Origin: Botryllus schlosseri
Lineage: Eukaryota
Length of the DNA stretch: 64,000 nucleotides
Reading direction: 5' to 3'
NCBI GenBank assembly: GCA_051294905.1
Contig: CM119373.1
Location: 24,738,001-24,802,000, forward strand
The notes beneath the pieces were generated by a model. It saw only the letters and a program-made list of their open reading frames with translations. It made no database searches and had not been told where the DNA came from. The translations under genes were made by a program, and so were the position numbers. Positions 5,466-59,496 of the stretch are shown here, in pieces (position 1 is the first letter of the stretch; the number at the start of each line of letters is the position of its first letter).

Positions 5466-5748
5466 TCACAGTCTCTTCGGGATTACGGCAAAATGCGTTA
5501 TCTCCATTCCTTTACTTCGCTTCAAATCGCCCTGTTGCAAAGCACCGGTCATCAGATATCCGTTCTGAACGTCGCTTTGCGATATGCGCGCGGATAAATG
5601 TAACTTGAAGTCCGGGCTGTTCCTTCGCTTGAAGCGGCCGGTTATGGTTAATGTCCCGTCGCGGTTTTGGGAGATGCGTCCGACCGCAGAATAAGTTTGC
5701 GAACCGCCGAGGCTGCTCTCGACTACCGTGCAATATCTCTTCCACCAT
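5466..5748 (-). CDS. Gene A, exon 2 (last coding exon); uncharacterised protein, paralogue of gene B
   Basis: Acceptor tgtttAG|ATGGTGGAAG. Joined in phase 2 to exon 1 it reads R-WWKRYCTVVESSLGGSQTYSAVGRISQNRDGTLTITGRFKRRNSPDFKLHLSARISQSDVQNGYLMTGALQQGDLKRSKGMEITHFAVIPKRL*. 51/94 residues are identical, ungapped, to gene B exon 2. This frame is not the one shown in the ORF track. Confidence 0.9.
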
Positions 5749-6621
5749 CTAAACAGATGAAATGATGCTTATACAGTGTCCAAGCAAGCATAACAAGGAG
5801 AATGATACGTAGGTATACGTTCACTTTCATTTCGTTTATTGCTATGTGCCGGAATTCACAACGTCGTTATCCGTTCAGTAAAACAACGGTGGAATTAGCT
5901 ATTCTGCCTTCTTACAGATCACTCTGCTCGATAGGAAGCAAACATTATCTGGGTCGATTCTTCGTATACCTAACACACATTTCACAAACGGCAGACATAT
6001 ATCCAATTAAGTCGTGGATCGAGTTCTCAAAATGCACCTGCGCATATGGGTGGTAAGCTTCTTAACCCGAGTGTCTTGACATACTAGCGAATGACAGGTT
6101 ATGATTGCGCCGCTAAGTATGGTCCAGTGGACAAGCGGTTGGTTGATTTGGACGTAGGAACTAAACCATGTTAAATGTGGCAATGAGCGTGGAGTAAACG
6201 CACAGATATAAAGCGCTTTTAGTACATGCCTATCACTTTTAGGTGGCTAGAAATGTAGTTTTCGATTATCTATCAAGTGAAATTAAGATACACATTTGGA
6301 TTATGTATAACAATACATCAGCCTATAAATACATGAGTGAAATAATGCGTATTATCCAAATTTCCACCAAACATATGTCATATAATTCCTCCATAGCCGG
6401 TCAAAATTGGTTCACAAGCATAAGGAAAAGTAACAAATTCCTAGTAAGTATCCTACGCCTGGTTTTGCCACGAAAACAGAAGAATATGAAACAGAAGTGG
6501 AAATAGTCTGATAACCAAGACAGATGAGTGAAGCAGTGCAAGTAGGCAAAAGATGGCTGAGTACTCCAAAAAGTTATTAGTACTCCGTTACTGATCATCT
6601 ATGAATATCTCGCACGCTCAC

Positions 6622-7121
6622 CTATTAACTTTTATGGTCCATTGCACTGTTTTCGCGTTTTTAGCCCATTCTTCTTCCGGATACAATAACACCTTCGCGG
6701 TGGTGCATTTCGGACCTGTCAGCAACGTTTCGCATTGCGACTGCCCCAACGCGTCCCAGTATTCATCGTAGATGCTGCGCTTGCGCTGTTTACAAGGCGG
6801 AGGAAAAAAATCGTCTAGATTACAGTTCGTGAATGAGTCCTCAAGGTCCACACACAGCGCAATGTCGTCCGACATTCCGCGCCTGGTTAGCGAATATTCG
6901 TAGTCGGAATCGGTCTTCATGCTTTCGACGCTGTTGACGGTTTTAGTGTGATCTTTAACGACAGACTTTCTGTATTCCTTTCGCTTTTTGAAACAGTCCA
7001 CTTCGAGTCGTACGTTACGCGCGTCGCAGTGTTGAGGGACGTGAAAACTGAATTCGTTGAGCGCCGAAGTGTCACCGTGTCGTTTCGAAGCCCGGTGGGA
7101 TAGTTGATCCAGTACTCCCAT
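6622..7121 (-). CDS. Gene A, exon 1; full CDS join(7121..6622,5748..5466), 260 aa, intron 5749-6621 (873 bp)
   Basis: Lies within ORF 6618-7184. The ATG at 7121 has a strong Kozak context (GCCACCACCATGG) and aligns with the gene B start. Donor AATAG|GTGAG at 6621. Shares motifs EFSFHVP, RxEVxCFKK, DSDY and KVxLxPEEEWAxNAKxxQWTIKxN with gene B. Confidence 0.88.
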
Positions 7122-7170
7122 GGTGGTGGCTGCGCGGATTAGTCGCCGGCCGACTTTGTGATGTCTAGCG

Positions 7171-7275
7171 TTAAATCTGAACATATGCGCGCATGCTGGT
7201 TACAAGTGTACTCGAAAAGGATTTATCCGTCTTAATCCGATACATAAAACCGTCTGGTACCGAGGAAGCGTACAT
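7171..7275 (-). promoter_or_regulatory. Putative upstream ORF in gene A leader (34 aa, MYASSVPDGF...YVQI*)
   Basis: ATGTAC 154 nt upstream of the main ATG; open to TAA at 7171-7173. Counts as a uORF only if the TSS lies upstream of 7275. Confidence 0.4.
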
Positions 7276-7332
7276 GGTGAAAAATACAGGATACGCAAGC
7301 CTATCTCATTCGTTTTTGAGTTATAATTCAGG

Positions 7333-7340
7333 TATTTATA
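7333..7340 (-). promoter_or_regulatory. Candidate TATA box of gene A (TATAAATA)
   Basis: Consensus match 219 nt upstream of the ATG (gene B: 234 nt). No clear Inr ~30 nt downstream, so support is weaker than for gene B. Confidence 0.4.
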
Positions 7341-10300
7341 ATCGCTGCTGCTTAACTACTACCATTTAGGCACCTCCTTGACTTCCGTCCACATAAGCTA
7401 TGTCATAAAATAACTCGAATGAAAGGGGGTCGCAATGTAAGGCGGCAGATTACGAATCATAATTAGGGATATCATCGACCTGGCGCAAATTTACAATTGT
7501 AGTAACCGTGAACACGAAAAGGGAAAAACAATACGTACTACCATTGGAATTTGAGTGCCGTTTAAAGAGTTTCGCACCACATCAGTTTATTACGTTGATT
7601 GTAGCGTTGTAATGCTCATGCATGCTTATGATATGTTCAATCCTTTCGAATTTACAAAGACCCTCTCTCCTCACATACATCCAGTCCAGTGACTTTATCT
7701 GTCGCAGCAACAAGGTCTATTTATGAGTGGTCGATGAATAGCCCATAATGTTTATATTAAGTTTCGGACATTAAACATGTCGCAATATTATTGTACAATG
7801 ATATACAGTCTGTCGTTCATTCTGGTGTGCAATTAATGGCATTTCCATTTGTTGTCCCGTGATTACTCGTACGGGTCATAATAGCCACGCTATCGGTAGT
7901 CGGATGTGTCTCACCTTCTCTGATATTATTTGGTTGTGGAGACAATAATGTATCTCACGATTACCATTCAACTATAGACGGAATCATAAATTACATATCG
8001 CAGCCATTTAGTGTCTACAATCTTCGAAATCTCACATGACTAAGTATTACAAATTTATTTAACTACCTCGTTATCTGATAGCATACGATTTATTGCAGCG
8101 ATAAAATTGACAGCTATATGGAGATTCGCAAAATGCAAACATATGCTTGATCGTGTAAAAATGAAGAGCGATAAGATGCAACTTAGTTTATGATAGTCTA
8201 TGTCTATTTGCGCTGTATAAGCCTCCTTTATCCAATAAGCGTACATTAAACAATGGGAAGTGAAATGTGCAAGCCTAAATGGATATATGCTATTCGTATA
8301 TGTGTTTGCATGAAATTTGTATATTTACCAACAATAAAGTCAATAATTTCAAGTTAACCATATGCATTCTAATTCGTGATTCTGCAGTCCTCTCCAGACA
8401 CAACTAAAATACAAAATGTTCCTCAGTTTATGAACCCTCTAAATACCAGTCTACCAGACAGTAAGCTTAAAACTGAATTACTTGGATGCCAAAAAGGATC
8501 AATATGCCGTAACTATAGATTCGGATGGGATATGTCCCCTTATTTTACGCCGCACCTGCTAGCCCTGCGACGCCCGCGAAGAAGACTGAAGAGTTTTGTG
8601 ATGCAACAAGCCAATTTCATGGTGCGGAATCGAGAGATACTCTATGCGAGAGAAGCAACTTTTTTCGAATTGTAATGAGAGCTGGGTTTTTATTTTGGTA
8701 TACAGTAAATATTCGCCATATCACATTTTCGGCGTTGGAGTCACGCAATTCGCAAGCCTAATTTGATGGATATAACCGTCTCAAATACTTTAAATAGCAT
8801 ACAGTTACGGCTTGTTGACATACATCCCACTATCGCACCTGCCTTGCCTGGAAATATTTTCGTAGACATTTTCAAAGTTGCTGTCCCGATTTTCAACTCC
8901 GCATGAATTCCTTAGCTCAAAACGCATTTCTTACAAGTACCTGCTGTTAGTGACAGATTTGAAAGTACTGCGAAAGTAGATGCATATAGCCGTAGTACAC
9001 AATGCACACCATATTCGAGTACTTTATGGACATTACGCTACTTTTTCAAATACAACCATGATTCTTCTAGGGGTAAATGATAATGCAGTTTGTGATAATT
9101 ATTATTAGTCAGTACACCAATGTGAAGTTACCTACGGACCTGCCACATGATGCTTGGACTAGGGGATTGTTCATATCTTTGGATATTCTCGGCAAACTTG
9201 AGAAAGACTAAACCAGTATATTCTAGAACATGCACCGGTCTTTTAGTCGATCATTTGTTTATTTTTCACCTGTAATTTCATCGAAAATCTGATGTCACTG
9301 ACGATGAAGTGACATATTAGTTAATGGCATGATCTTGCCGCGGGTGCGTAGTATTACATCAAGTTCGAGTATAATGGAGGTAATCCAATCCAAACTAGTA
9401 ATAACATGTGTTGCTGTAATATAATTGATTGTTTGATATTTTTTAATGAAAGGTTCTACTAATCTAAATGAACCTTAAGTGTTTAAATGCAATAAAGTGA
9501 CCTAACATTCAACACAACACGCATGACTTCAATCGCGTATTATGGTGTCTGTGACTTTTATGGGAATCAATAAACCTCAAACAGGTATATTGTTCTGAAC
9601 GTCACCTCAAACGCTCTTAGATTGCAACACTGTGACGTATATGATCTAATTTTAGAAATATCCTGTATCTGTCGCTTCATTCAGGTGCAATCAACGAAGG
9701 AGAACGAACCCAGGGTATATGTCACAATGAACATAGGCGTCTAGTTGACAGGTGAGAACCGTGTCTCCCTGTGCTTAGTAACTGAAATGGTGTGCCACAA
9801 AAATAAAATGGTAATCCTGTCTTTTACATATCGTAAATGATAACCTCCAATGAGAACATAGAACCATGTGGAAATGATGTGCTATGAACAGAGGTAGGCA
9901 TTGACGAGATACTTCCAATTTCACGCATAAGACACGTAACACTCAAGTCTATTCGTACCATTGTCACAGTTACTCTTGAGGTTGATTTGTAGAGTATTTC
10001 CACTTCTACTTCGCGATATTTGTAGTCATATAATGTATTGTAGCCTACATGTATGATACAAAATTTTGGTATGGGTTGGAATTTTGTTTGATATCATTTG
10101 CCTAAACATATGGCGACATAGCTCATGTATCTATATGAAACGTTTACCAACTAGCCATTTCGTAGCAACGGTAGATACTCGTCATTATATGCTGAGATGC
10201 ATGTTAAACACATCAAATTTCACACCGCATAACAGTACAGTGAAATCAACCATTCGACGAATGTTCTGCAAGGGTGATTTTGGACTAACCGCTTCTTGCT

Positions 10301-11062
10301 GATGTCTGATTGTCGTCGCCGTTGCTTGGATTCTTTTGCGATAATGTCACCGCAATACCTCACGGTAATGAAAATCATTCTCAAGCATCTGTACATTTCC
10401 ACCATTTCACACTATGGCGGAGGTAGTACATTCATTAGGAATACCTCTTTCCTGTTCCTTCGTTTGAAGTATCCTATATTATGGTCAACTACACGAACTC
10501 AGGAAACGCGCGCGAGCTATCGATGTCGGTGATTAGATTTCGTTTAATGAATTCGCCTCCATGAAGAGTTGAAGACTCATTGGAATAGAATTTAATCACG
10601 ACGTCACCGACTGAAATCTAATAAATATTCAGGGAGCACAGCTCACAAAACATGTCGCGTTCGATATCAATGTCAGCAAAATGCTTACATTAGATTGCGT
10701 AGTAATATAGTCTCCCAGGGAAACATAAATAATGAAGCTTATTGATCGGGGGTGACGAGCTGTGTCCTTCTATTCCTACATCAATTCAATCATATGAAGT
10801 TGAAAACGAAAGGATAAATTTTTTCACGACACTGATAAGAAAGATACAACATGTGCGCACGGCTATATTTGGCATGTTAAAATAGCACAGGGGTTAACCA
10901 TTCTGCATATTTCATGAGATCAGTTTATCAATGCTTGGGACTTAAACCTGTTCCCAGTCAATTATCGAGGACGTATTGAACACAGTACGCTAACCAAATC
11001 AGTTATTTCCTCACACTCTTCGGCCATGAAAAATAATAACCTAAGATATGATTTCATTTAAT

Positions 11063-11400
11063 TAGGGTTACCATATTTTGGAATCGGGAATAGGGGACAG
11101 TTTTAACAGATCATAAAAGTTGGCAGACTGAAATTGAAAACAGCAGATTTTGATATATGTATTTGAAATCTTCTTGTGCTGTCTACAAAATAAGGTCATC
11201 ACTCTGATTCGACTCCCGAATGACCAACTCGAACGTCCGTATCACTTGGTTCACGTCATTTATGCCGATTTTCATTTGACTCTGTCCATCACTTTATCTG
11301 TAAAAGATGTAAAGGAGTACATGTAGGCGTCCTCGGAGGACATTTTCTGTTTCGTGAAAAGGAGGACAAATCCTCTTGAAGGAGGACGTATTGTAACCAA
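11063..11400. mobile_element. Degenerate hAT-like MITE
   Basis: Left end TAGGGTTACCATATT...GGGGACA; right end GGAGGACAAATCC...GGAGGACGTATTGTAACCAA, an imperfect inverse of the left end. No TSD found. Confidence 0.4.
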
Positions 11401-14400
11401 TGTTCCCTCTAATTTTCCACGAGTCTGCGCACACTCACCGACTCACTGTGCGGTCCCTTCGACAACAGTCCGTAGCGACTAAGAAAGAGGTCATCACTTC
11501 AGATTTCTTGTGCGCGACTGCAGTGAGCGGCTGCGCGTTCTTTATTGATTTATGCGTTACAACATACGACTGTAGTGTTTTGTCGGTTTCCAATCCATGT
11601 TCGTCACGTATCGCCTAATCCAAAGGGATTAATCATTGATTGTTTATTCCTAACTGACAGGTGCTGGTCAATACCCGCGCATCTACTGCGTGAATAATTT
11701 GGAGTCTTGCAAGGTTATACCTTCGTCGTGCTATCGCGCCGGATCCGCCGTCTGGATCAAGGCAGTACCGACGCGGAGTCTGATCCCGTTGGGAGTTCAA
11801 GGGCTCGACATTAAGGGACAAATTCAATAAAGTCCCGTGCTTTGTCACATAATCGATGCGAGGCTTTTCGCTCAACAGCGCTTTGGACGAATACTGTCCG
11901 CAAAGGAATCGATATTTCTTGGAGGCGTTCGAAATTTTAATTTATGCACGGAATTGAAGTCGATTTGATTTTCCAGCCGCGAGTGTGGTTTGATTCGGAA
12001 TTTTAATTGCTTAAATGCTGGCGGGCTCCGGAGCTGTTGCGTTGTGTTGATGCTATTTCTCGCATTTAACTCCGTATTTAGTGTGCATTACCCCTGTCAA
12101 AATGATACGTACATACAAGGAAACTGACACCTAATTATGAAATCACAGGAAGAAAACTATGATTTCAGGATACTGTCACAAGCACAATTGTACATTGTTC
12201 AAAAAAATACAATTTTCCACTCTTGGATTGTTACGTAACGTTGAGAATTATGCTTACTGATGTCATGACATTGTGAACCCCGATTTTGCATTTCACGAAC
12301 AGTCAGACATAACGATTTTCAATTTTCATTCGAGACGGACGGATAAAAGAATTTTGCTCGAAATGCGATTAACGAGTTTTTAAAACAATATTTGGATTTG
12401 GGTGAGAGGGCAACATGGATTTTCTAGCGAATTTCCAATTTCAAGCCACTTTATGAATAAATTGAGAAATATCGGAATTAATCTTCATCTCTCGAAGGAA
12501 TGAAATTATGTTAACACTTTGATAGTTTAGTTGATTTGATAGTTTTAAATACGCTAACCTTTTTTGTGTATATAATATAGCACGACGGTCGGTGGAATTA
12601 ACACATTGCGGTGAAAGACTTCTACTCCATAATACATGAGTGCCGTGCACCGAATGGAAGGTTGAAATCAGAGCGACACAGGGCATTACATTGTTATCAC
12701 CCGCTCAAATTTTATGCTGCGAATTGCGACATCGAAATCTCAATTAACGGTTACGCCATTGACCACTATGACCGAACCACGTTCTATTCTGCCTTTTTTG
12801 TCGCGACTCACAATCCCAAGTCTTGGCCACTGTATTTTCTCTGCTTATATCAGAATTTAGATGTGATCAATATTTGTCAAGTGTCAGGAGGGCCTAAGAT
12901 AGCTCAATAAGTTATCGGAGGCCTCGTGGTAATTGAATAAAAGAACGATAGCTGCCAGTGTTATTTCTCATTCCCTATAGACCGACAAGCTCATTTTATT
13001 GGAGCTATACTAGTCCTTTTCGTACATGACATGCTGAGGACGGTTACAATATATGCTTACAAATAGAACTAGGCATAACGAATCGAGTCTATGAATCCCA
13101 GTCGGGTGTCAATTGTAATGATTAGAGCTGTGAAGTGACAATCGACTTTGTGTAACGAAAATATACGCCTTTGCATCAAGAGTAACATCTACAAAACTAT
13201 ATAGTTCACAGATTGAATTTCCAACGTTGGATCCTCGAAATCTCGACTAGCTGTAGTCCATCACCGAAAACATGTTGCGGTTACTAATATTCATGGAACG
13301 ACATTTCTGTCAAGTAGTGATTAATCTTCATAATAGTCACCAAGCGTTACGATATAGTCATGGTCTAGAAATACAATATTATATCGGATGACGTGGAGCT
13401 GTCATCATTGTCAATATAGACCCGAAATATATACATATATATATTTTAACTTTTGAGGTTATAGGTACTCTTCTAACTTGTTGAAATTTGGCACTCGAAT
13501 ATTCGACTCGACCCGAAACTTGAATGACAATCCAATAAATCAGATACTCAATCTGACCACCCCCTCCAAATCAAAACAGATAATTCTAAGTCATGTAGCA
13601 CTAGAAACTTATTTGCTATTTCAATGCAGGAACCCGCACATAGCATTACCACCTACTGGCCAATTGCTGTCAGCATATCCAATATCCAATAGGCATCATG
13701 CTTATTCGCTCACCTCCGGTTCACCGCCAGCGTCTTAAGGTACACGTCTTTAAATCACCCCAAAACATGCTCTTCAAACCCCCGCCGGTGATGGATCACA
13801 AACGTACCACGATCAAACCCGTTCCTTTTCTCTCAGGGTGGGCCGTGAACATAAGCAGTTAAACACCTTTCACAGTCTGTGATGAATGAGTTGAGACTGA
13901 CATACATTGGGGACGTGGCAAGGTATATATTTATCGCCGATGTAGCCACAGGCCGCCATAGTATCTTGAATGATCAAAGCGTCCGTGCTCATACAAATAG
14001 GTTTATGTGTGGAAAAACTGATGTAATATCTTCTTTCAGACAGTTAAAAGATAACGTAACGTCACATTGTCTTTTTTCATTCTATGAAACGGTTGCCATA
14101 TTTGCTATATTTCTGAACGTGTGGTTGTGGTCGTATATACTATGACGCCGAAATCAATTATACGTTAGAGGATAGAGAAGTAAACTGCATCATATAGTAG
14201 AATATAGTTAACACATATCTGCATAGTCCATAATGAATCTGCACATTAGATAAACCAATGTTCTGCTATCAATGCAATGCATTGTTTCGTCTCGTTTTAT
14301 TTTGGAAGGGAGATACATACAAGGAGTATAACTCAGTTGGTTCTTTGATACAGAAGCAACGCCGCGTTCTCCTGATGATACCATTACAAAACGGAGCCCC

Positions 14401-17013
14401 AGGTTATACATTATAGCATTCTGTAACCGATACGCTGGGTTACAATCGGCTGTTGTTTTGTTTCCGGATAATACGTCACTGTATAATTCATATTTATATT
14501 TATCTAACATGCACTTCAGTGCATTTCACATGTTGATGACCACAATTTCTCTGACTTCCGATATAATAATAATAGACCGTCCATATTTATCCACTTGCAA
14601 TTGGAATTTCATCTGATCAGTGCCATAGACATGGAATCATAGTTTTCATTAGCAATGATATATAGCTATGTGAAATTATAATAACTTGAAGTTTACGTAA
14701 AATACAGAATTACTTTGCTGATAGTTACGTCTCTTGAAAGCAGTTTTGAAGCGCATGATGTTATTATCTTTCAAGTAAAACTTACTTGTATATTCAACGC
14801 CGACTCATACACCATGTAGAAAAAAAAATTTTAGGTCAATGCGGTTCATCTTTATAGGCTTTCATGCAACTATGTCTCGGGACGTAATAATTCAGGGAAT
14901 CCAAAATCAGTGACCAACGATGGGGGCGTATGAGAATGTATGTTAGTTAAATTTTTATAATGTACATTTTACAACGTAAACAGGTCTCAATCCCTCAATT
15001 CCTACTCAGTGTCTGTGATGCAATCCTATTTCACCCATACTAGAGATTCGTTGATAACGTGTGGTGTTATAGTGAAATGGTGTTTACTGACATCGTCATA
15101 AGATATCATTCCCATTCACGAAGACCACCTGATAAATCTACATAACTGAGACTTGTTCGAATCATCCCTGCTAGCAATGTGCGTGTTTGTCTGTGATATT
15201 ACCAGACAGAAAAAAAATCTAACATTTATTTAACAACTCTACCTACAGTATAGACTAGAATTGTTCAAATTGGAATGAATTGGCACAATAAACCATTCTC
15301 AATTGCACGCATGATATAGCCCACAGTTATCCATACAGCATTTGTTCATTAATAAATCCATTAATCTATGGTTAGGGGTGTTGACCTTGACACATCTCAA
15401 ATGAACATGGACAATAATAATCAATTTTCGGACTGTTAATCTCGTCTATATCCCACCCGAATTTGCTTATTCCTATAGGCGTGTTGTCAGACAAGTACAA
15501 GGTATATTCGAACCCCTCAATTTACCTCTCAGGTTTTCTGACAACGCTTCGGTAGCACGTTTTCCCGACACATATGCATCATCCAGGGCCGTCACTGTCC
15601 TTTCCATCATTCTAATGTATGTCGTTTTCCTTGCTTGGTGGTCCCGTGTCATTAATGGGATGTATCCTAATCAGATAAGACCTTATCGATAGCAAAGATA
15701 GAGCTGCCATAGAAAAAAGATTCATGCAACCTTTGTCAGCGCTCGCCACCCATATAACTGCTCATGAAAGACGGCAAGATGAAAGTCCGCACGTGGTTAA
15801 CTTAAAGAATGGACACACCATCTGTACAAATACGCTTATCGTTCCGATTGAAGGGACGCTCAGAGGTAAAAGGCGCTTTATCGCCTCGAGATATGCATTC
15901 GTCCGGCAAATTTGGAAGGATATTTGATTATCCCATCCGCACAGCACATGCTAAAAAGACTGTTGAACAGCGACAATACAGTTCTTTTACATTCCCCCTT
16001 ATTTTGTTTGAACAATCAGTATATTCTATGAACTAATTTGGTTGTAAAGCGTTTAGTGAGGGTACTGAGGAATTTTACCGATTTGTACCTAGAACGGCAT
16101 AAATTTGCATACGAGATATGATCATTAGGACAAGTTTTGGCAATTTTTGCAACTTTTTTTACAGCTCCCGACAGCTTCCTAGATATTCATAATCTATTAT
16201 GTTATGATGTTTTAAGATGCTTGGAGAAATTTTATAGTGCAACATTCCGTAAGTTTATCTATTTTTCATGCAAATTTTTACCGCAACTTTCATCAACTGT
16301 TGCGCAGAATCTGACTAAATGATTTAAAAAAACATGCTATAATAAACTATTTCTAGTATGGAACTATATTCTCTTTGATTTGCATAAGAAAGAGCTATGT
16401 GATGGATTACGTGCATCTCAATGTTATGTATAACTCAAAGGCTTGAAAGCTAGAAGTTCAACTATTCCAGGCAAGCACTCCGTGCCCGAACAATAAGTAA
16501 ATATATCGCTTTATTAATCCAGTCTTTTAAATTTGACGAAGTTTTCCATTCCACGAACGCCAAGGAGAGAGACGAAAATTACATTTTCACTGGGTAACCG
16601 TTTTCAGACTATTGATTTGGTTAAAGTCCCCAACGGTGAGTTTTAATGCAATGCCTCAGGCCAAGTTTGCAGGCCTAGGGGGTTTGGAGTGTGGTATTGA
16701 ACTTGATTTAGGGTGAGGGGACTGGTGGATTATCGCTATGCTCTTTGGATTATTGGGAAAGACTATATCCGCAGGATTCAAACCTAAATAGCGTAAAAGT
16801 ATACGCATGATGGTGATCGATTGAATAGCGAGGAGAGAGAAAGAAGCACTCAAGAACGGTGAATTGAATGACTCAATAATGATGTCATTAAGTCGCATTA
16901 TCTAAATATGCGGAATCAAATTCATCTAGCGTGCCGTACTTGCCATTCTTGAAATCAATCCAACGCTGGGTGGTATCACGTCATTAGGATCAAGTTCTAA
17001 TAATATTGATGAT

Positions 17014-17570: not shown

Positions 17571-17586
17571 GACGTCACGTGACTCA
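17571..17586. promoter_or_regulatory. Composite bZIP/bHLH site: GACGTCA (CRE-like) + GTCACGTGAC (palindromic E-box) + TGACTCA (AP-1), overlapping
   Basis: Sequence GACGTCACGTGACTCA seen directly; more ACGT-core motifs within ~60 bp on each side. Function is inferred. Confidence 0.45.
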
Positions 17587-49300: not shown

Positions 49301-52300
49301 AATAAACAATATCAGCGGGTAATGCAATTTCATGTACCAGCACAGAAATGTTTTCGGTCTGACGTAGAACGGAGTGTAATAATGTTATACATAACACGGG
49401 CTAACAGACACGAATATAAAGTTGTCATAAAGGTATTCTAGCGCAAAATATTATGGTTTGGTAATTAAAGTAATGAAATCAGTACGATGCTTTTGATACA
49501 CAACGACATTGACGAACTTCGTTCGACAACACCCTGTCTACTTTCTTGATACTATATATAGATTTTATTATTTATACTATCGCCTTTCATATTCCAATCC
49601 TTCACTTATACTTCTTTAAATAATTAAAGTATTAGTATAGAGATCACGTCCATACTGACCATATCGGTGGTTGCTGAAAAAACCTGAAACATACATCTCT
49701 ATATGGGAGTGTGATGAAGCATATTAGTAATTCGAAATCTTTAAATGATGCAGATAACATGCTTCACAGCAGGTCTAATAAATCCCACAATAATTAACGC
49801 AAGTTACCAGTATACGGAATTGTGTTTGATCAACTATTCAATAGTTACTATCGTCTTCATTGTCAGCATGAGTCAAAGGTAGTTTGCTTTTTACACTGTA
49901 AGAAATATTCATCATCATCGTTGCATTGACTATTGAAACGTCATTGCACTTGTGCACTCTTTTATTAATAGTACCGTTACCTATAATTACTCTAAGATTG
50001 TGGCTCCGGAAAAGAAAAATGTGAATGGCCAATTCATTACGTCATCGATAATTCCAATTTACCAGCTCATATATTTTAAAACAAACTGCTAGCTGTAATA
50101 GCGCTTTACCGTGAAGGTCTTTTTCTAAGACGCGCGTGACTACATCTACATCTTAACCACCACGTTAAACGAATTCCTAGAAAGACACTTTGTCAATTTA
50201 ACGACCATTGTCACAGATAGGTCGAAGACGAAAAAGGTATCCCGGTATTTGATGCATGCCCCAAGTATAGATCGTACACGAGGCTGACCGAAATCTTGCG
50301 TTCTTCATGATGTAAATATGTGCCACTAAATCGGTCTTGAATTATATAGACCGAAATTACATCGATGACTTTATAATATAAGCGGTGTGCATTACTCATA
50401 TACAAGTCATGGGGCTTTTTCATTCTGCGCGGAAATTCATACTAAATGGAATGGTAGAACTAGCGCATCGGCTGAGGACCAAAAAAAGATCGCTCACACT
50501 GCCATGGACATTGGACACCTTGGAATCTGAGTGCAAGGGCAAATGAATATTTTCGTCTTTCTGATGCCGAGGAAGAAAAGCGCCAGCAATCATACGTAAC
50601 CCATAAAGATGTAACAGTGATACCACGGGCAGACTCAAGACCTTGGGGTTTCACAATTTTAAGTCGATATGGAATGAGCACTTAGGCAGTACGGAGAACA
50701 GAAACGGGACAAAGATATCGACGATACCATCCAGACTTCGAAACGTGAATACCCATCACGAAGAGATGAATTTATTCCGTGTCGGATTACCAAATGAACA
50801 TTACACACTGAGTGATCATCTTACTCCAATTGATGCTTCTGATTTATTGTACTCGGTTATTGTTGCTCACGAGCTGTATTCCTGCTCTGGAACATCGGTA
50901 CCGGACACTGAACAACATTTCGCAGAGAAACTATGTTATATAATATTATATTATATAACGAGTGCAATTCCTGACTTACACTAATATTCCACAACATGCA
51001 TCGATTTCGTATAGCCGCCAATAATGTATAAGTTCTGAATGTCGTATAACGCATGGCAAGAGTAAATCGAATTGTGTGGATTGTTGAAATCAATTAGCGT
51101 GTGATGCAAAATTCTTTTGTTTCCATAAACATCATACCACGATTTTATCAATAAAATAATAATAAATTCTGCTTATACCTCCTCACGGTGTGTGTTATTG
51201 CCGGACCATTGGTCTCACGTTTTTATTTCGAACCTTCATGTATAATTTCAGGAAATATCTTAAATATAAAAACAAAATATATCTGTATGCACTCTACTGA
51301 GCAACTGCTCCATATTGATGAATATTATTTTATTCCCGAATGATGGTCCAATGTTGGACATTGACGAATGCAAATATCAAGTTATAGTTTCTACGAAGAT
51401 TCTTTTTTCTTTATACCCAAATGGTGTCAGTTGTGATATGTAATAAATGAAGTGCACTATTTTACATTAGTCATGGATGAAATTATCTCTAATTTAATTG
51501 TGTAACAAAGTGTGCATTTTGTGATATTCAGGGCGTACCTGGTTCTGTTGTCGCTTGAAAAAAAATTGAGTATATCAACTCATTAACACGCCCAACACAA
51601 ACACTCAGCTCATTGAACATTTCCTCCACACTCTGCAAACGCAAAACAATACAAAACGAGATTTGAACACGCATTGATGAACCATTACCGTTTCCGGTAC
51701 AAGTTATAAAAATTCATTTCAAAATGATCATACCTGTTCAACGATACAAAAATCTTGCATCGTCGTTGTCACTGACAAAGTATGGACAGACTTGTCGTCT
51801 CTAATTCCAATGATTTCGCTATCGGGAATCTTAGGCCGTTGTTTCTTAGTCTCATTAACAGTGTTAATGATAATGTTGGCGTTCGGTGTATTCCGCGAAT
51901 GTGGGCCTTACCACAGCACGATCTTAGCCATCTGACGTCAATGGATTCAGCGAATCCCGCTCTAAATTGCAGACAAAGTTAATGTTTCGCTAATGAGCAG
52001 CGCGAATTGCTACCTCCGCTTCTCAGACTTGAGAGATAATAACACGCTGTACACATTTTTCGGATAAGAGAGAATGATGTGAAAACGGTATTCTGTCTGT
52101 CTTCTTTGAAAAATCTATTACCATCCCTTTGTCGCTTCCCTTAAACGGCTAAATTTTGTCCACTAAACTATTGCTTTTGTCTGGAAACAATACGATTTAG
52201 CATCAATCAGCACTGTATAGTGACGTAGTGCGATCACCTGGGTTTTGGTAATCACCTTGCTTCCCTGAAAGATAATATTGGATATCCTGAATTCTTGTAG

Positions 52301-55300
52301 TTACGGTTTGAGATAAAATGATCTTTTTGCGACGTTAAGTGTTCGAAAGATGAATTGAAATGCAACATCTATGCCAGAATTTTAGTGTAGTTGTGGTTTG
52401 GTCGACAGGAAAATATATAATCCCTCAAAATGAAACCAGGTCAAACTCACCAATTGATTTCATGTTTTTAATTGAATTGGTCCCTGAGGATTAGGGTTGG
52501 CAACCCACTGAAATTATTCGTTTGAATTAATATACTGACCTCGTCCATTCGTATCCTATAGTATGTATGAATCCAGGTAATCCTGGTGTGTTGAACTGTC
52601 CGCTATGGGAGCAGTTCAAGCGTATTATGACTCATAAGTCGGGACGGTTGACACAATCTCCTCCGTGTGAATCTGATGAAAATGGGGATCAATAACTTTG
52701 TATAGACTTAATTTAGTTATGGCGAACTTTTCCTTATTTCTACAGCATGCGATACCCTACAAAGTGTCAACGGATTGTCTGGACGTTCGCCACATGACGT
52801 TTACGAACCATTGCGCGGGCCACTTGAATGTTGATGACCTTTTTAGTCTTCCAACAGGAATGAACCGAATTTGGTGACGGTGAAAACAAAATCAATAAAA
52901 ATTATGACATGAAGACTCTGCGTGCAATAACGACGTAGCAGCGCGCAGCGCGAATTCCCTTTCAAGTTAACGAATGCCGATAATAATGTTACTTGCATAT
53001 ATTCCGGGGGTCGCCTCTGCATACCGCTGGGCTCATTTGGCAAGGACAGGATTATCCGGCGCTTGAACTTATAAATACCAAAGATTTCGGATAATTTGCA
53101 AAACATCGTACTTTATGGTCATGGTCATATACGACGATCTACAAAAATTGTGGCTGGTCCATGGCTACGCCAATGCGTCGGAACTGATATATATTTCAGT
53201 GATATATCATTTGCTTATCATAGAAATGTAACTATATATTTACGAACATCTGCTCTTGATGAAGACCGGGTAACATTGCAGAGTAACGTTCGTCCCTAAA
53301 GGAAGTTCTGGTTACCATGTGATAATTGCCCCGGAAGGAGGACAATGTAACAAATGTTGTGGAACGAGTGGAAAATGTTAGTCATCTACATGATTTCATC
53401 CAACATTTTGTTCTGCGTCTTTTCGGTGCCCTTACCCCACTGCAGAATAGCAAGATACGTACACCATACAACGTTATAGTATACAACTGATCCAAACTTT
53501 AACTTGGTTGCATGAACCCTATGATAAAAAGGCAATGCCATTCACACTCGAGAATTGAAGATATCATGTATCAAAAAAGATTTTGGGGCCTCCGTTTTGT
53601 TGATGTCTGTTTTGGTGCGCAGTGTGCAGTAACGTGTGAAGAATACTCTTTTAAACACTACGTGTCTCGTCCCTAATTGGATGGCAGACTTATTGATTTT
53701 ATTCGTTTATCCACACATGATAAATCTGCTGATCTCGAGATAACATATTCCAACTTGGAAAATTAGCGAATATCATTAAATGTAGTATGGTCGGATTCAA
53801 TTTACGTCCAATTTACGTCCATATATATATATATGTGTATGTATATCGGCATTGTTATCAAATGTAACTACAACCGTGCGTCGCCGGACTGAATGAAGTG
53901 ACTATGATTGTTGGTTGAGCGATGTATACCTGTTCGCAGACACAAATCTGCCAAACCATAAACCCCAAGTTGCGGAGTAGCTTTTAGTGGCAGTTACGCC
54001 ACGCATTAATGTAAGGCAGTCCAAGTTAGCAAGGTATAAGAGTGTACTTGTAGAGTCAGTAACGTTGTGAGCGTGTTGTTCCACACATAAGTGGATTCCT
54101 TATCCCTTTATGGCTGAACAAACCTGGTTGTTCATTTCATTGTCTAAAACTGTCATTAATAACTATAACAAACGATAACTATGGAGTTCCTTTGATGTGT
54201 TTGCTGTTTGTTGAGTGTGGTGGCTATGAAGTAGGCCTATACAGCAATCCGGCCAGACTGCATTACACAGCCATGGATTCACATGTATTCAGTGAATTTG
54301 ATAATACATACTGAGGTGAACCTCCTTTGCCGCCCGATACATCTACATAGGACAAGGAAAATAAAGCTCTGTCGATACCATGCACATTTGTCATTACATA
54401 TGCTGGTTATGCGGCGTGTACTGCTAAAAAAGCTATCAAGCTGCAGTGGAAAGTGGAGAAATAGCATGGGGGCGGTTTTTGCAGTTGTAACAGCTGCGCG
54501 TGTTTGATTCCGAGAATGGTCGTCCCAAGAAATGCTACCAAAATGTTACAGGTTTATCTTCTCCTAGCGACCCGACACGCCCAGACCTACTACAGTACAA
54601 TACCGGGCTCTGCTAAATGTTGACAGCTCAGAAATCATAATAAAATTACCGACCATTCTGTAAATGACCTGTGCAGTGCACCGAGAATGCTTCAACGACA
54701 ACATATAGTAACGCAGCTATGGCGTAATACATGCCCATTCCTGTTTGACAAAATCCGATTTACGGCGTTAGTAATTTGATAACCAGAAGAATCAAATCCC
54801 ACGTAGCAATAGTTCTAATGGAAACAAGTTGCTATCATATTACGCAAAAGTGCAATCATGTACGTTGCAGTACTATTCGCCTACCGGGCACCGAAGAGCA
54901 ATGTTTATGGTTTGCGTATTTATTTAATAACACCCTCGAAAGATTTATCGCGCCAACCATGAAAAATGTGATATCAAACTGTGTGCGGTGTCTGGTTGTA
55001 TACATCCTCTCAAGTGGTGCGATTTTAAATATTCCTAGACTGATGTGTTTACACGTAAGCAGGCTAATTAGTCACCCATTCCAGTTGGTGAAACTGAAGA
55101 CGCAGAGCAGGATGTGATAGGATCAGTTCAGTCGCGTTAGTTGGGCGCGCGGTGTTTGAAAATCTCTGCAGTCACGCTGTGCCAACCAACCCGTCATCCG
55201 CTACCATCAGTCATCGCGGGGTAATGGGATACGTCATCGTCACACGCAGGCATGGTCAAAGTAAATTTGGTGTAGACACTAAAGTTTTTGAGGGACAGTG

Positions 55301-58170
55301 TATCATTAGGTGATTTAACGGAAATGGATTTTGAATAAGGTACAAATTTAATCGACAATAAAAGGCATATCAAGGATACGATCGTTGTCCCTGAATTTAT
55401 ACTAGTCCTGTTGAAACAAATAAAACTTATATCTCGCATTGATGGTATTGATGAAACTCTGGTACGGGGCCAGGGGAAGAAAGGTACCAGTTGAGCCTCC
55501 AAATCTTCGACCTGGAAATTGTGATGACATACGTTGTCACTGCGTCCTAGTGAATATCTGTGGTGACACGTAATCATTCAAACTTCCACGGTGGCTACGC
55601 GGGTAATTTCAACCAACCATATCGAAACAGCGGGTATTTGAGCGCGTCCCTGTGACGTGAAATTGGTAGCCCTTCATGGTGTTTGGTTGCTTGATTATTC
55701 AAATGTTTGACCCACTATACGTAAGCTGTAGCGTATTTGATAGTTGCACTGGAATGCGATTCACTCTATCTAACAATACCATGAATAATGCTCCCACTAT
55801 GATATCAAGGCACCTGGAATTCCGGTCCAACGGAGGAACACTCGGAATTCTCTGCTCAACCGTAAGAATTGAACATGTATACTGTCTAGGCTTTCCATCA
55901 CCCAGCAATACTCCGTAAAGGAAGTCACCAGCAGAGATTAGCATAGTTAATACTTTCGAATTTACGTGCGAATTTAAATTTAGCATAGATTTCATATTGG
56001 CGCTAAATCCAAGCGTCAATTCGGTGATAATGTATTCAGAACTGGCGTGAAGGAGCGAAATCACTAGAAATTACATTATAATAAAACTTGGACGTTATCA
56101 AAATTTTCAAATGGAAATCTGTGCCGATCTTTATTGTCTGGCGACATCGTACCGAGCTTTAACTCTTCGTTACAGTTAGTAACTATCAAATCACCCCATA
56201 ACTCTACCTTTTTACGTGTGAACAGACCGGCCATTGCTTATATCACTATTCTTCTATATAAACTTGATCCATTCACATCGGATATGATGGGTGTGAAACT
56301 ATAGCGCTTTGTCACAAATGTTTTGCAAAGCCACGTTGGAAATCCGCTGAATCGATATTTTCTTTGGCAGTGTGATTTGCAGTAATCTTTAATCCCAATA
56401 ACCCGCATGTAAATAAATAAAACAAACACAGTTCTATTGCTAATCATATGTTCATCTCCGGATATTTTTACGTCACAGGGCGATTCCCGCCCGATATCAT
56501 TCTCATCACGTTATTATTAAGTCGAAATCCACGATGTAAAACTCCGGGTATCTTTTCTCAAGGTCGTTATGCCTTGATATGAACCGTGTTTGATGATAAT
56601 TTCGCGTATGTCTCATTGTGTCAAAGTTAATGATACTCTTGTATACATGGTACTGTGTCCGTGTGGTTATGGAATTCAAAGTGTGATCCGGTTTCTCCTA
56701 AAAACTCAAGAATATTTCGATGCGCGACAGCTTTGCAAGTTTCGACGACCTGCCAGTTTTCGCGACGACGTGAACTGCACGACAGCCGGAAATGTGGTGC
56801 GTCGAGTCTGGAAAGCTCATGTCATTATTGTTGTGGTACGCTGTCTTAGTAGGAAACAAGATTTGTCAGTCCCAGTGAGTCGCGCCTTTCGTTAACTGTG
56901 TACGCATAGTTAGGGCACCCGTCACGCGTGCTTTATAGGGCACTTGCAATTAGTCAAGCGAGGCCCGCTGCTGTACGGGGCAGCCTGCAATATGTTAGTA
57001 AACACAGCGACAGCGTATATCGGATGTCAAGACTAGGTTGTAACGCGCTAATCATGTTGACGAAACGGGACCATATCTTCTTGCGACACCGCTAATACAC
57101 CCGTGGCATACGGCATTACACAGAATCTCCCGGTATAATTGGTGCTCAATAATGACATACACGATAAGAATATGCGCAAATAATCTCATACGCCGAACCG
57201 GGTGCGCGATTGGCGCAAATGTGGATGCGGAATCAATAAGTATTCTAGAATTCATTTCTAATGTTTCTACGGGATAATTTAAAATGATTAAATTGAATTT
57301 GTGGATTTCAGCCAGTATTGAAACACGAATAACCGTCCCGATGTACCGATCCTGCCAATCGATTAATTCACTCATGTTGGAAATATTCAATGGATCAGAT
57401 ATGTAGATATGTGTGTGGTTTGTGAACTGTTTCACTATATCACTTTTAGACGGGAATTCCATTTTAATTTTACCCCATTGCGAACATACAGGTTGTGCTC
57501 TAGCAAGTCGCGTAAACCAAGGGTCAAGCACTGAGTTTTTTTCAGGAAAGGATACCGATTTAACATTCCTAGTCCCAATCCTAATCCCAATCAATCAGTA
57601 GTTGGCGAAATTTTGTCATTTGAACATATATAGCCTACAATAAGAGCTGTAAAAATTGCTTGATTTTGCGGCTAGGAAATTATTTTGGGTTATATGTAAA
57701 ATCGAGCAAACCACATTGACCATATGCATATCTTGTTCGTCATGATTATCATTTCCAACCGCATGTCCTCAACTGAAAGTTTGAATACATATGCGAAAAG
57801 GTCTGGTAAATGATCAAGGTTGATCAGTACCTAATTCCACTTGTTGAATTATTACGTCGAACAGTTGGAAACATAAGTTGTTTATACCGCATAAATAATT
57901 TGCATTAAGACTGAAATCCTGTATCTGCAAAGATAGCGCAAAATAGTGGTGCCGTGGTGGAATACGAACATTGTATCGTCATTGCATCAGGAACATGTTT
58001 ACTGTAATAATCAGCGGGATAAGACGTAAGCGAGGGTGCGTTTAACCTATTTCATTCACGGAAAGAAACGGTTCCACAATATACCGGCCGCAAAGTGGAA
58101 TCGCGAGCGTGTTAGGTTTTCGGAAAAAATAGTTGACGGAGAGCGAACGGAAAAAAGAGAAAGCGGAGCG

Positions 58171-58203
58171 TATAAAAAGAGCGCACTGTCGGAGTGTTCA
58201 GTT
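58171..58203 (+). promoter_or_regulatory. Core promoter of gene B: TATA box (TATAAAAA, 58171) plus Inr (TCAGTT, +1 A at 58200)
   Basis: The TATA lies 29 nt upstream of a TCAKTY-type initiator, the canonical spacing; 205 nt upstream of the ATG. Confidence 0.7.
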
Positions 58204-58249
58204 AGACGACGCTCGAAAGTATTGTAAGGGATTTGAAGTAATCTCTCGC

Positions 58250-58318
58250 ATGTACAGCGTGGAAAAGGATGTTTTTCGATTATTGAAGTCACTATTTCAG
58301 CATCATCGTTACGATTGA
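58250..58318 (+). promoter_or_regulatory. Putative uORF1 in gene B leader (22 aa, MYSVEKDVFRLLKSLFQHHRYD*)
   Basis: ATGTAC 155 nt upstream of the main ATG and downstream of the predicted TSS. Confidence 0.45.
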
Positions 58319-58330
58319 GTGTACCTGTAC

Positions 58331-58408
58331 ATGCAAAATTCTAAATTCAACCATCTTTTCAGCAGATATTCATATTGCAACCTCGATAATATAACTCTGC
58401 AGCCATGA
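58331..58408 (+). promoter_or_regulatory. Putative uORF2 (25 aa) whose TGA overlaps the main ATG (ATGA)
   Basis: ATGCAAAAT...CAGCCATGA read directly; out of frame with the main CDS. Confidence 0.4.
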
Positions 58409-58919
58409 AATTTTTTGGAGCTAACTCGAAGAGAAAGGGTGGCGAAAGCACAGCCGTTGGCGAATTCAGCTTCCACGTACCGGCGGAGGAAGTGAAGCCT
58501 TCCGGAAAACGTATCGAAGTCGAATGCTTCAAGAAGAAGCGCGAGTTCAAACCCAACATGATCAGCCAGCATCTCAACAGCCTGGAAAGTCTAAAATCCG
58601 ACACTGATGTAACATCAGACTCCGACTACGATTCGATGCCGCGATCCGAAGAGAGCGACATTTGCGTGTCGCTGAGCAAGTTCCGATTGGAAGACACTCT
58701 CCCTCATTATTACGAACGAATACCGAGTCCAGCGCATTCCGAGTGTGGCTCTTGCGAAAACACGCATCGGCGCTTGCGCGAAACCGCATCCATCGACTCT
58801 AACGACTCTATGATCGACACAGCTCAATCATCTTGCGCAGTAACGAAAGTTATGTTATTTCCCGAAGAGGAGTGGGCCAGAAACGCGAAGTCAATTCAGT
58901 GGACCATCAAATTTAATAG
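58405..58919 (+). CDS. Gene B, exon 1; full CDS join(58405..58919,59211..59496), 266 aa, intron 58920-59210 (291 bp)
   Basis: ATG in a GCAGCCATG context; donor AATAG|GTACGT at the same codon position as in gene A; shared motif blocks with gene A; higher GC than the flanks. Confidence 0.9.
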
Positions 58920-59210
58920 GTACGTTAATTTACAATGTTGGTAATCAGATGTATAGCGTACTCTCCATAGCTTACTTAGTTACTTGGTCCGTGGACATAT
59001 GACCAATTAGCATGAGATACTTGGCCATGTTGGTTAAGGTTAGGGTTGGGTGTGAGTTAAATATATAGTCATTTGTAGTTTTTCATTGATTTTCATGTCT
59101 GATGCCCCTCTATGTCTGCAAAATATGTGAGCTTCGAATTTCCCAAAATAATAACAGCAACGGGAACTTCGTTTCAATCGTGATTTTCAATCTCCCTCTC
59201 TTTTTATCAG

Positions 59211-59496
59211 ATGGTGGAAGAGTTTATGTATCGTTACCGAGACAAGCGTCGGGGGCTCGTACGTGAAATCCGCCGAAGCGAAGGTCGTCCATAACGCCGA
59301 CGGCAGCCTCACAATCACCGGCCGCTTTAAGCGCCTCGAAAACCCGGACTTTCGACTTGAGTTGTCGGCGAACTTATCGCGACACGATGTCAAACTCGGA
59401 TACGCGATGACAGGAGATTTACTGCAAGGCGATCTGCTGCAATTCGGGCACTTGGATGCTACGCACTTTGCGGCGATTAACAAAGACCAATGTTAA
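59211..59496 (+). CDS. Gene B, exon 2 (last coding exon); uncharacterised protein, paralogue of gene A
   Basis: Polypyrimidine tract and acceptor ctctctttttatcAG|ATGGTGGAAG; reads R-WWKSLCIVTETSVGGSYVKSAEAKVVHNADGSLTITGRFKRLENPDFRLELSANLSRHDVKLGYAMTGDLLQGDLLQFGHLDATHFAAINKDQC*. Confidence 0.92.

What the first reader, a model, noticed from the sequence alone, without database searches (positions are those of the whole stretch)
5466..59496. Head-to-head pair of old paralogues sharing a 51-kb gene-free upstream region
Seen: two two-exon genes with the same intron position and phase (AATAG|GT...AG|ATGGTGGAAG in both) point away from each other. I could find no other protein-coding gene between them. 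Their introns and spacers show no obvious nucleotide similarity and the best-conserved exon is ~54% identical at the protein level, so the duplication is old and both frames remain intact. Inference: a long non-coding interval retained between divergent paralogues is typical of bigene clusters under shared long-range control. Each gene is invisible as a whole in the ORF track because it is split.
Basis: partly seen in the sequence, partly recalled or inferred. Interest (0 to 1): 0.8.

Follow-up and report, generated by a model that had tools for sequence, protein, structure and literature searches.

The report
Old tunicate paralogue cluster, ordinary spacer
Two real, expressed sister genes of an unstudied animal protein family face away from each other across 51 kb in a sea-squirt genome. 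They belong to a three-gene cluster, and nothing I could test shows that the gap is a shared control region.

Summary
Gene A (-, coding 7121..6622 and 5748..5466) and gene B (+, 58405..58919 and 59211..59496) are two-exon paralogues. Each has one phase-2 GT..AG intron at the same codon. Exon 1 is 35% identical and exon 2 is 55% identical.

RNA reads confirm junction 58919^59211 in B and show that its mRNA carries the tunicate spliced leader. The junction in A rests on spliced orthologue transcripts only.

- The pair is part of a three-gene cluster, A(-) 51 kb B(+) 64 kb C(+). C lies beyond the window.
- In Styela clava, A's orthologue is head-to-head with C's orthologue, 17 kb apart. B's orthologues lie 8.7 Mb away on the same chromosome.
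- The B-to-C gap, between two genes on the same strand, is longer than the A-B gap.
- The spacer holds a tRNA-Gln gene, dispersed repeats and a transposon-like remnant. I found no locus-specific conserved non-coding sequence.
- I found no other protein-coding gene in the spacer, but small-exon genes are not excluded.

The proteins (260 and 266 aa) have a disordered N-terminal half and a confidently predicted 8-stranded beta-barrel. They have no Pfam family. Uncharacterised relatives occur in other tunicates and in hexapods, with structure-level hits to a few more uncharacterised entries.

The parts
5466..5748 (-). Gene A exon 2 with its stop codon. It encodes most of the C-terminal beta-barrel.
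   Evidence: Sequence read directly. 55% identical to B exon 2. 87% identical to the S. clava LOC120347569 exon.
5749..6621 (-). Gene A intron: 873 bp, GT..AG, phase 2.
   Evidence: The junction KVNR|WWKRY is present in the spliced orthologues P0002, P0003, P0004 and P0005. It was not tested with this species' reads.
6622..7121 (-). Gene A exon 1 coding part, from the ATG at 7121. It encodes the disordered N-terminal half and the first barrel strand.
   Evidence: Kozak-like GCCACCACCATGG at 7121. The ORF extends in frame to an ATG at 7184 that no orthologue uses.
7122..58404 (.). A-B interval of 51,283 bp. No protein-coding gene was detected in it.
   Evidence: None of 35 ORFs of 100 aa or more matches Pfam at E<=0.01. 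None of 122 ORFs of 70 aa or more matches the S. clava flanks. No RNA-seq reads fall on 55200-58150. Only 7.7% of the interval repeats within the 174-kb neighbourhood, but there were 14,276 first-look repeat candidates genome-wide for 7200-27000.
16116..16773 (.). Dispersed repeat of about 640 bp.
   Evidence: At least 39 scored copies on many chromosomes at 77-80% identity.
29361..29432 (-). tRNA-Gln (anticodon CTG) gene inside the spacer.
   Evidence: Rfam RF00005, 66.1 bits, E 3.7e-12. ARAGORN.
31940..32020 (.). Short dispersed repeat. It is the only spacer sequence that also matches an S. clava spacer.
   Evidence: blastn match to the S. clava B/B' spacer and to the B-C spacer. 476 first-look candidates genome-wide, of which 40 were scored at 83-88% identity.
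36170..37422 (-). Transposon-like ORF remnant. It was noted separately by the scan as a hAT fold-back element.
   Evidence: The 198-aa ORF has 24 fragmentary, unnamed homologues on many contigs. No Pfam domain.
58360..58365 (+). Two adjacent trans-splice acceptors (cag|cag) where the spliced leader joins gene B mRNA, about 40 nt before the ATG.
   Evidence: Loose 5' read ends before 58361 and 58364 read ...ATTGGAGTATTTGGTTGTATTA. This equals the published tunicate leader 'Chordata 1' (PMC3795323). It has 426 genomic copies against 0 for the control.
58405..58919 (+). Gene B exon 1 coding part.
   Evidence: RNA depth is 10-17 per strand in raw reads.
58920..59210 (+). Gene B intron: 291 bp, GT..AG, phase 2.
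   Evidence: Joint 58917->59209 (cut +2), 'skips 291', in 17 RNA reads and in contigs of two further runs.
59211..59496 (+). Gene B exon 2 with its stop codon. The 3' UTR runs on to about 59770.
   Evidence: RNA coverage reaches about 59770.

Best explanation
A and B are two members of a three-gene local family, A(-), B(+), C(+), spread over about 120 kb of a gene-poor stretch of a tunicate chromosome of roughly 0.5 Gb genome size.

The family arose by old duplications. One inverted duplication gave A facing a B/C-type gene. One further duplication gave B and C. All three lineages existed before this species split from Styela clava. All keep the same single phase-2 intron and intact frames under purifying selection.

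The 51-kb interval is most simply ordinary intergenic DNA that was inherited and then expanded. It contains dispersed repeats, a transposon remnant and a tRNA gene. There is no demonstrated shared regulatory landscape.

The mRNA of B, and probably of the others, is matured by spliced-leader trans-splicing, so the true transcription start is not visible in the mature mRNA.

The encoded proteins have no signal peptide, a disordered and partly acidic/serine-rich N-terminal half, and a C-terminal 8-stranded up-and-down beta-barrel. I infer an intracellular protein whose barrel binds a small ligand or a peptide. That functional step is inference only.
For: - Paralogy and shared intron.
- Third paralogue C at G000:C3:24861396-24861784 and from 24863524, with the same intron position and phase.
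- Trees group winA with S. clava LOC120347569 (100/99) and winC with LOC120347419 (100/96 and 99/96). They group winB with LOC120347519/494 (96/92, then 93/87 in the second tree). B and C are sisters (96/92 and 97/99).
- S. clava coordinates on OZ123522.1:
  - A-orthologue 14011041-14012056 (-) faces C-orthologue 14029424-14030577 (+). No gene is called in the 17.4 kb between them.
  - B-orthologues sit at 5304631-5306017 (-) and 5316171-5317532 (+).
  -.
- Expression, splice junction and spliced leader of B.
- The gene A stretch is partly held by the same RNA-like runs.
- Purifying selection: pS is saturated, dN is 0.24 (A vs ScA), 0.37 (B vs ScB) and 0.55 (A vs B), and 17 of 24 coding variants in B are synonymous.
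- Spacer content.
- Structure: residues 143-259 have pLDDT above 90 and form eight strands. The N-terminal 140 residues have pLDDT below 60.
- Barrel matches: Z 11.0 and 10.4 to designed beta-barrels, and 8-8.5 to avidins and Gid4.
- Family range: 99 representatives. All named ones are 'uncharacterized', from tunicates and hexapods. A fold search adds a few more uncharacterised entries.
- No Pfam, NCBIfam or PDB sequence relative.
Against: - In both species A faces a B/C-type paralogue with no gene detected or annotated between them. That could reflect constraint rather than inertia.
- The lack of conserved non-coding sequence is weak evidence, because synonymous sites between the two species are saturated.
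- The gene-free status of the spacer rests on ORF, Pfam and cross-species tests, with RNA laid on only its last 3 kb.
- Gene A's junction and expression were not shown with reads of this species.
- The ligand- or peptide-binding role of the barrel has no direct support. The fold matches are generic.
Confidence: 0.75

Rival explanations
1. The 51-kb interval is a regulatory landscape whose enhancers serve both divergent genes. Selection against breaking it keeps the genes linked, head-to-head and free of intervening genes.
For: - A is head-to-head with a B/C-type paralogue, with no gene detected or called in between, both here (51 kb) and in S. clava (17.4 kb). This has held despite saturated synonymous divergence.
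- A and B are held by several of the same RNA-like runs: X1, X2, X3, X5, X11, X14.
Against: - A's partner differs between species: B here, C in S. clava. The S. clava B copies lie 8.7 Mb away, so A-B linkage is dispensable.
- There is no locus-specific conserved non-coding sequence.
- The B-to-C gap is 64 kb and the left flank of A is equally empty, so the spacing is regional rather than specific to the divergent pair.
- The proximal 3 kb upstream of the two genes share nothing.
- The spacer tolerates a tRNA gene and repeats.
Confidence: 0.15
2. The interval is not gene-free. It holds one or more unrecognised genes, either protein-coding genes with small exons or long non-coding RNAs. If so, the two paralogues do not share an empty upstream region.
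For: - The tests used here see only ORFs of 70-100 aa or more, or sequence conserved with 4 S. clava loci.
- RNA was laid on only 55200-58404 of the spacer.
- A pol III gene, tRNA-Gln, is already there.
- Low-depth contigs of run X2 lie at 55.4-55.8, 56.9-57.3 and 57.8-58.1 kb.
Against: - No ORF of 100 aa or more matches Pfam.
- The S. clava RefSeq annotation calls no gene in the orthologous A-C spacer or in the B-B' spacer.
- The raw RNA-seq run X23 has zero reads on 55200-58150. The X2 contigs have depth 0.3-3, which fits DNA or pre-mRNA background.
Confidence: 0.15
3. The head-to-head layout reflects how this family duplicates. Inverted duplication is favoured mechanically, and selection on the arrangement plays no part.
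For: S. clava carries a second, independent head-to-head pair, B and B'. Its arms are about 2.1 kb long and 86% identical. They include about 0.7 kb upstream of the start codon, and the two genes lie 10 kb apart.
Against: - This is one extra case only.
- B and C lie on the same strand here.
- No inverted-repeat remnant survives around A and B.
Confidence: 0.2

Closest known systems
Bigene clusters with shared intergenic enhancers, such as the vertebrate Dlx1/2, Dlx3/4 and Dlx5/6 pairs (from general knowledge)
   Same: Two old paralogues lie next to each other in inverted orientation, with a non-coding interval between them.
   Different: - Dlx pairs are tail-to-tail and only a few kb apart. 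Their linkage and intergenic enhancers are conserved across vertebrates.
- Here the genes are head-to-head and 51 kb apart.
- A's partner differs in S. clava.
- No conserved non-coding block was found.
- A third paralogue lies 64 kb further on.
Bidirectional (divergent) promoter gene pairs
   Same: The orientation is head-to-head.
   Different: Such pairs have start sites less than about 1 kb apart. Here the start codons are 51,283 bp apart. B's mature 5' end is made by trans-splicing.
Styela clava uncharacterized proteins LOC120347569, LOC120347519/LOC120347494 and LOC120347419 (RefSeq)
   Same: - They are orthologues of A, B and C respectively by tree.
- They have the same two-exon structure, with the intron at the same codon and phase.
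- All lie on one chromosome.
   Different: - Introns are shorter: 218-592 bp against 291-1739 bp here.
- Spacers are shorter: 10-17 kb.
- B is duplicated and lies 8.7 Mb from the A/C pair.
Small 8-stranded up-and-down beta-barrels: avidins, lipocalin/nitrobindin-like calycins, Gid4 substrate receptors and designed barrels
   Same: The predicted C-terminal domain superposes over 100-115 residues. Z is 11.0 and 10.4 for designed barrels, and 8-8.5 for Gid4 and avidins. Foldseek gives about E 1e-3 to nitrobindin.
   Different: - Sequence identity is 3-12%.
- No sequence-level relation to any solved chain.
- No Pfam family.
- The matches form a flat list of generic barrels, so only the fold class is shared and no family membership follows.

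Membership tests
Bigene cluster under shared long-range control | Two paralogues adjacent and in inverted orientation | tested here: met
   A is on the minus strand and B on the plus strand, head-to-head, with paralogy at E 9e-30 and 8e-37. There are three genes, however, not two.
Bigene cluster under shared long-range control | Linkage and orientation of the same two genes conserved in other species | tested here: not met
   In S. clava the B orthologues lie at 5.30-5.32 Mb and the A orthologue at 14.01 Mb of OZ123522.1. A is paired with the C orthologue instead. Ciona intestinalis and Clavelina lepadiformis show one family gene and no paralogue within 10 kb on either side.
Bigene cluster under shared long-range control | Conserved non-coding elements in the interval | tested here: not met
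   blastn of the 174-kb region against four S. clava loci gives only exons and one dispersed repeat. Caveat: synonymous sites are saturated, so this test is weak.
Bigene cluster under shared long-range control | Overlapping expression driven by shared enhancers | not testable with these tools
   The only information is that both genes occur in some of the same RNA-like runs. There are no spatial, accessibility or contact data.
Bidirectional promoter pair | Divergent start sites within about 1 kb | tested here: not met
   The start codons are 51,283 bp apart.
Spliced-leader trans-spliced tunicate mRNA | cDNA 5' end carries the species' leader joined at a genomic AG acceptor, and the leader is encoded elsewhere | tested here: met
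   This holds for gene B. The loose 5' ends match the published 'Chordata 1' leader. The leader is absent from the window and has 426 copies in the genome, one of them followed by GT. The acceptors are cag|cag at 58360-58365. Gene A was not tested.
Lipocalin / calycin superfamily | 8-stranded antiparallel up-and-down barrel | tested here: met
   The predicted model has eight strands at 143-259 with pLDDT above 90.
Lipocalin / calycin superfamily | Family sequence signature or profile match | tested here: not met
   No Pfam lipocalin, avidin or FABP hit for the window exons or for 10 relatives. No PDB sequence hit with the family profile.

The most novel reading that the evidence does not exclude
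Gene A and a B/C-type paralogue may have stayed divergently paired, with nothing coding between them, since before this species split from Styela clava. The same family formed a second head-to-head pair in S. clava. Together these could mean that this uncharacterised beta-barrel family depends on a shared divergent regulatory block. If so, this would be a tunicate case of co-regulated head-to-head paralogues with a very large shared upstream domain.
Probability: 0.15. Interest if true: 0.5.

Novelty: new member of a known kind. Interest (0 to 1): 0.3.

Why it matters
As a gene arrangement this is an ordinary product of old local duplications, and it does not open a new question.

Its modest value is in annotation:
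- It defines three intact, expressed or probably expressed genes that an ORF track misses.
- It fixes their splice sites, and for A the likely start codon.
- It shows that B's mRNA is SL trans-spliced.
- It places the genes in a conserved family found in tunicates and hexapods, with structure-level hits to a few more uncharacterised entries. The family has a confidently predicted beta-barrel and no Pfam entry or studied member.

That protein family, rather than the 51-kb gap, is the part worth following up.

Tried and rejected
- **Pfam on the four exons and on 10 full-length relatives:** nothing above noise.
- **NCBIfam:** nothing.
- **PDB sequence search with the family profile:** nothing.
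- **ESM Atlas feature search of the barrel:** best score 0.88, to unnamed bacterial clusters, which is below the trust level.
- **Weak hits of the profile search:** a weak match (E 2e-6) to a Pseudomonas Ig-like repeat protein. I treated it as compositional or repeat noise.
- **Conserved non-coding elements:** the only spacer match to S. clava (31948-32005) turned out to be a dispersed repeat.
- **Synteny of other S. clava neighbours:** no match within 30 kb to the left of the window or 80 kb to the right. The exception is a glutathione-peroxidase gene.
- **Literature search by six RefSeq LOC identifiers:** no paper.
- **Loose ends at 58919:** eleven RNA reads leave exon 1 of B at 58919 and continue as ATGTTTATCTCCCGC... 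This sequence is found neither in the window nor in the genome with up to 3 mismatches. It is unexplained. It may be a library artefact or a mixed consensus.
- **N-myristoylation of A-type proteins (MG start):** considered and dropped. The position that usually needs a small residue is Q or E. This is my reading against the known consensus.
- **Operon reading of the trans-splicing:** rejected. No same-strand gene lies within 51 kb upstream of B.
- **Repeat mapping:** The genome search scores only the most abundant repeat per query, so the repeat fraction of the spacer could not be measured.
Full report
**What is there**

On the minus strand, an ORF from 7184 (probable true start ATG 7121) runs to a GT donor after 6622. 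An AG acceptor before 5748 opens a second exon that ends with TGA at 5466. On the plus strand, an ORF from ATG 58405 runs to a GT donor after 58919. An AG acceptor before 59211 opens a second exon that ends with TAA at 59496.

Both junctions read AATAG|GT...AG|ATGGTGGAAG and are phase 2. Spliced in a script, the products are 260 aa (A) and 266 aa (B).

- Exon 1 products are 35% identical (E 9e-30).
- Exon 2 products are 55% identical (E 8e-37).
- Introns, the 3 kb upstream and the 2 kb downstream share no nucleotide similarity.

One correction applies. A's start is most likely 7121 (GCCACCACCATGG), where all orthologues begin with MGV....

**RNA evidence**

I could lay reads once, and chose 55200-61100 around gene B.

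- A 2026 bulk RNA-seq run gives 17 reads with 13 different starts across a joint that skips 291 bases with GT..AG ends. This is exactly 58919^59211.
- Contigs of two older runs carry the same joint at depth 162 and 52. Intron-containing contigs have depth 5-7.
- Coverage runs from about 58362 to about 59770.
- No raw RNA reads fall on 55200-58150.

Reads that start at 58361 or 58364 carry extra 5' letters, ...ATTGGAGTATTTGGTTGTATTA.

- This sequence is not in the window.
- It occurs 426 times in the genome against 0 for the reversed control.
- It is followed by AAG|GT in a sampled copy.
- It equals the 'Chordata 1' spliced-leader consensus GATTGGAGTATTTGGTTGTATTAAG of PMC3795323, Table 1.

Gene B mRNA is therefore SL trans-spliced at a cag|cag double acceptor 40 nt before its ATG. 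The real transcription start is not visible in the mature mRNA.

For gene A, the stretch 5000-7600 is 20-31% held by several of the same small RNA-like runs. That fits exon-only content but is not proof. Its junction is supported by spliced orthologue transcripts (KVNR|WWKRY in P0002, P0003 and P0005) and by the S. clava RefSeq model.

**It is a three-gene cluster**

A six-frame search of the window's own genome (window = G000:C3:24738001-24802000) with A's exon 2 finds A, B and a third locus at C3:24863525 on the plus strand. Its exon 1 lies at 24861396-24861784.

The donor AA|GTGAGT and the acceptor CAG|G sit at the same codon and phase. The product is an intact 227-aa protein.

The layout is A(-), 51 kb, B(+), 64 kb, C(+). 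A glutathione-peroxidase gene follows on the minus strand about 10 kb beyond C.

**Age and orthology**

The best named relatives are four 'uncharacterized' Styela clava proteins. Maximum-likelihood trees give these groupings:

- a tunicate clade (100/100)
- winA with LOC120347569 (100/99)
- winB with LOC120347519/494 (96/92, then 93/87 in the second tree)
- winC with LOC120347419 (100/96 and 99/96)
- B and C as sisters (96/92 and 97/99)

Ciona, Phallusia and Clavelina proteins form a separate group. Its position relative to A and to B+C is unresolved.

Synonymous sites are saturated in all comparisons (pS 0.76-0.88). dN is 0.24 (A vs ScA), 0.37 (B vs ScB) and 0.55 (A vs B). Of 24 coding variants seen in B's reads and contigs, 17 are synonymous. 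Only one of the seven replacements falls in the barrel. 'Old duplication, both frames maintained' is therefore right.

**Is linkage conserved?**

On S. clava chromosome OZ123522.1:

- The A orthologue lies at 14011041-14012056 (-) and the C orthologue at 14029424-14030577 (+). They are head-to-head, with no gene called in the 17.4 kb between them.
- The two B orthologues lie at 5304631-5306017 (-) and 5316171-5317532 (+). They are also head-to-head, 10 kb apart, and 8.7 Mb from A.
- Their arms are about 2.1 kb long and 86% identical.
- A glutathione-peroxidase gene flanks B' there, whereas here it flanks C.

A-B adjacency is thus not conserved. A facing some B/C-type paralogue is conserved.

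In Ciona intestinalis and Clavelina lepadiformis I found a single family gene with no paralogue within 10 kb. In Ciona the upstream divergent neighbour is a KCTD gene.

**The spacer**

- It contains a bona fide tRNA-Gln(CTG) gene at 29361-29432 on the minus strand.
- It contains a 640-bp dispersed repeat at 16116-16773.
- It contains a short dispersed repeat at 31940-32020.
- It contains a transposon-like ORF remnant at 36170-37422. That remnant has 24 fragmentary, unnamed homologues and no Pfam domain.
- None of the 35 ORFs of 100 aa or more hits Pfam at E<=0.01.
- None of the 122 ORFs of 70 aa or more matches the S. clava flanks.
- blastn of the 174-kb neighbourhood against the S. clava loci finds only exons and that dispersed repeat.

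I found no other coding gene and no locus-specific conserved non-coding element. Two caveats apply. Small-exon genes and lncRNAs are not excluded. Given saturated divergence, the absence of conserved elements is weak evidence.

The same-strand B-to-C gap (64 kb) and the empty 35 kb on A's other side show that wide spacing is a property of the region, not of the divergent pair.

**The protein**

A profile search of 1.84 billion representatives finds 99 proteins, 47 of them at E<=1e-10.

- All named hits are 'uncharacterized'. They come from tunicates and from hexapods (Hymenoptera, Hemiptera, Diptera and Collembola).
- A fold search adds a few more uncharacterised entries, whose organisms the tool did not give.
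- No Pfam, NCBIfam or PDB sequence relative exists.

AlphaFold2 was run on orthologue P0003, which is 81-82% identical to A, with 45 aligned sequences.

- The N-terminal 140 residues are predicted disordered (pLDDT below 60).
- Residues 143-259 form an eight-stranded barrel with pLDDT above 90.
- The shared intron cuts the barrel after its second strand.

Structural matches are a flat list of generic small barrels:

- designed barrels, Z 11.0 and 10.4
- Gid4 and avidins, Z 8-8.5
- nitrobindin by Foldseek, about E 1e-3

There is no signal peptide. My inference is an intracellular protein whose barrel binds a small ligand or a peptide. This is not tested.

**Verdict**

The central claim, a bigene cluster held together by shared long-range control, is not supported.

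The arrangement is best read as an ordinary, old, three-member duplication cluster in gene-poor DNA. My results agree with the first and only partly test the second.

Noticed in passing
G000:C3:24861396-24861784 and 24863524-24863817 (63.9 kb beyond gene B's stop, outside the window; L004 8397-8785, L003 1500-1793): A third intact paralogue, C (227 aa, plus strand). It has the same phase-2 intron position and is the orthologue of S. clava LOC120347419.
   Followed up: yes
window 58360-58365 (+), and L009 1501-1526: Gene B mRNA carries the tunicate spliced leader GATTGGAGTATTTGGTTGTATTAAG at two adjacent acceptors (cag|cag). The 22-nt core of the leader occurs 426 times, dispersed over all large contigs. 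A sampled copy is followed by a GT donor.
   Followed up: partly
window 29361-29432 (-): A tRNA-Gln(CTG) gene (66 bits) lies alone in the middle of the spacer.
   Followed up: partly
window 58919 (+): Eleven RNA reads leave exon 1 of B at the donor and continue as ATGTTTATCTCCCGCTTAGGG... This sequence is absent from the window and from the genome with up to 3 mismatches. It could be an artefact, a mixed consensus or sequence missing from the assembly.
   Followed up: partly
window 16116-16773: A dispersed repeat of about 640 bp with dozens of copies at 77-80% identity on many chromosomes. It was not classified.
   Followed up: no
window 31940-32020; also L013 about 8890-8955 and S. clava L006 8850-8910: A short repeat with a GGCCCGCCGACT core. 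It is present in hundreds of copies here and also in S. clava, so it is probably the conserved end of a mobile element shared by styelids.
   Followed up: partly
window 36170-37422 (-): ORFs of a transposon-like remnant. They have 24 fragmentary homologues in eukaryote-sized contigs, with no Pfam domain and no names. The scan notes it separately as a hAT fold-back element.
   Followed up: partly
S. clava OZ123522.1 5304631-5317532 (L006, L007): A second head-to-head pair in the same family. Two B-type copies have arms of about 2.1 kb at 86% nucleotide identity, including about 0.7 kb upstream of the start codon. The genes lie 10 kb apart.
   Followed up: partly
G000:C3 about 24874023-24875643 (-) (L020 about 2023-3643): A glutathione-peroxidase gene lies convergent to paralogue C. 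Its S. clava counterpart lies convergent to the B' copy, which points to rearrangement within the cluster since the two species split.
   Followed up: partly
window 58405-59496: RNA samples of the same species label differ from the assembly at many sites (reads are mostly 95-99% alike). This includes TAA>TGA in B's stop codon at 59495. Polymorphism is high, as expected for a tunicate.
   Followed up: partly
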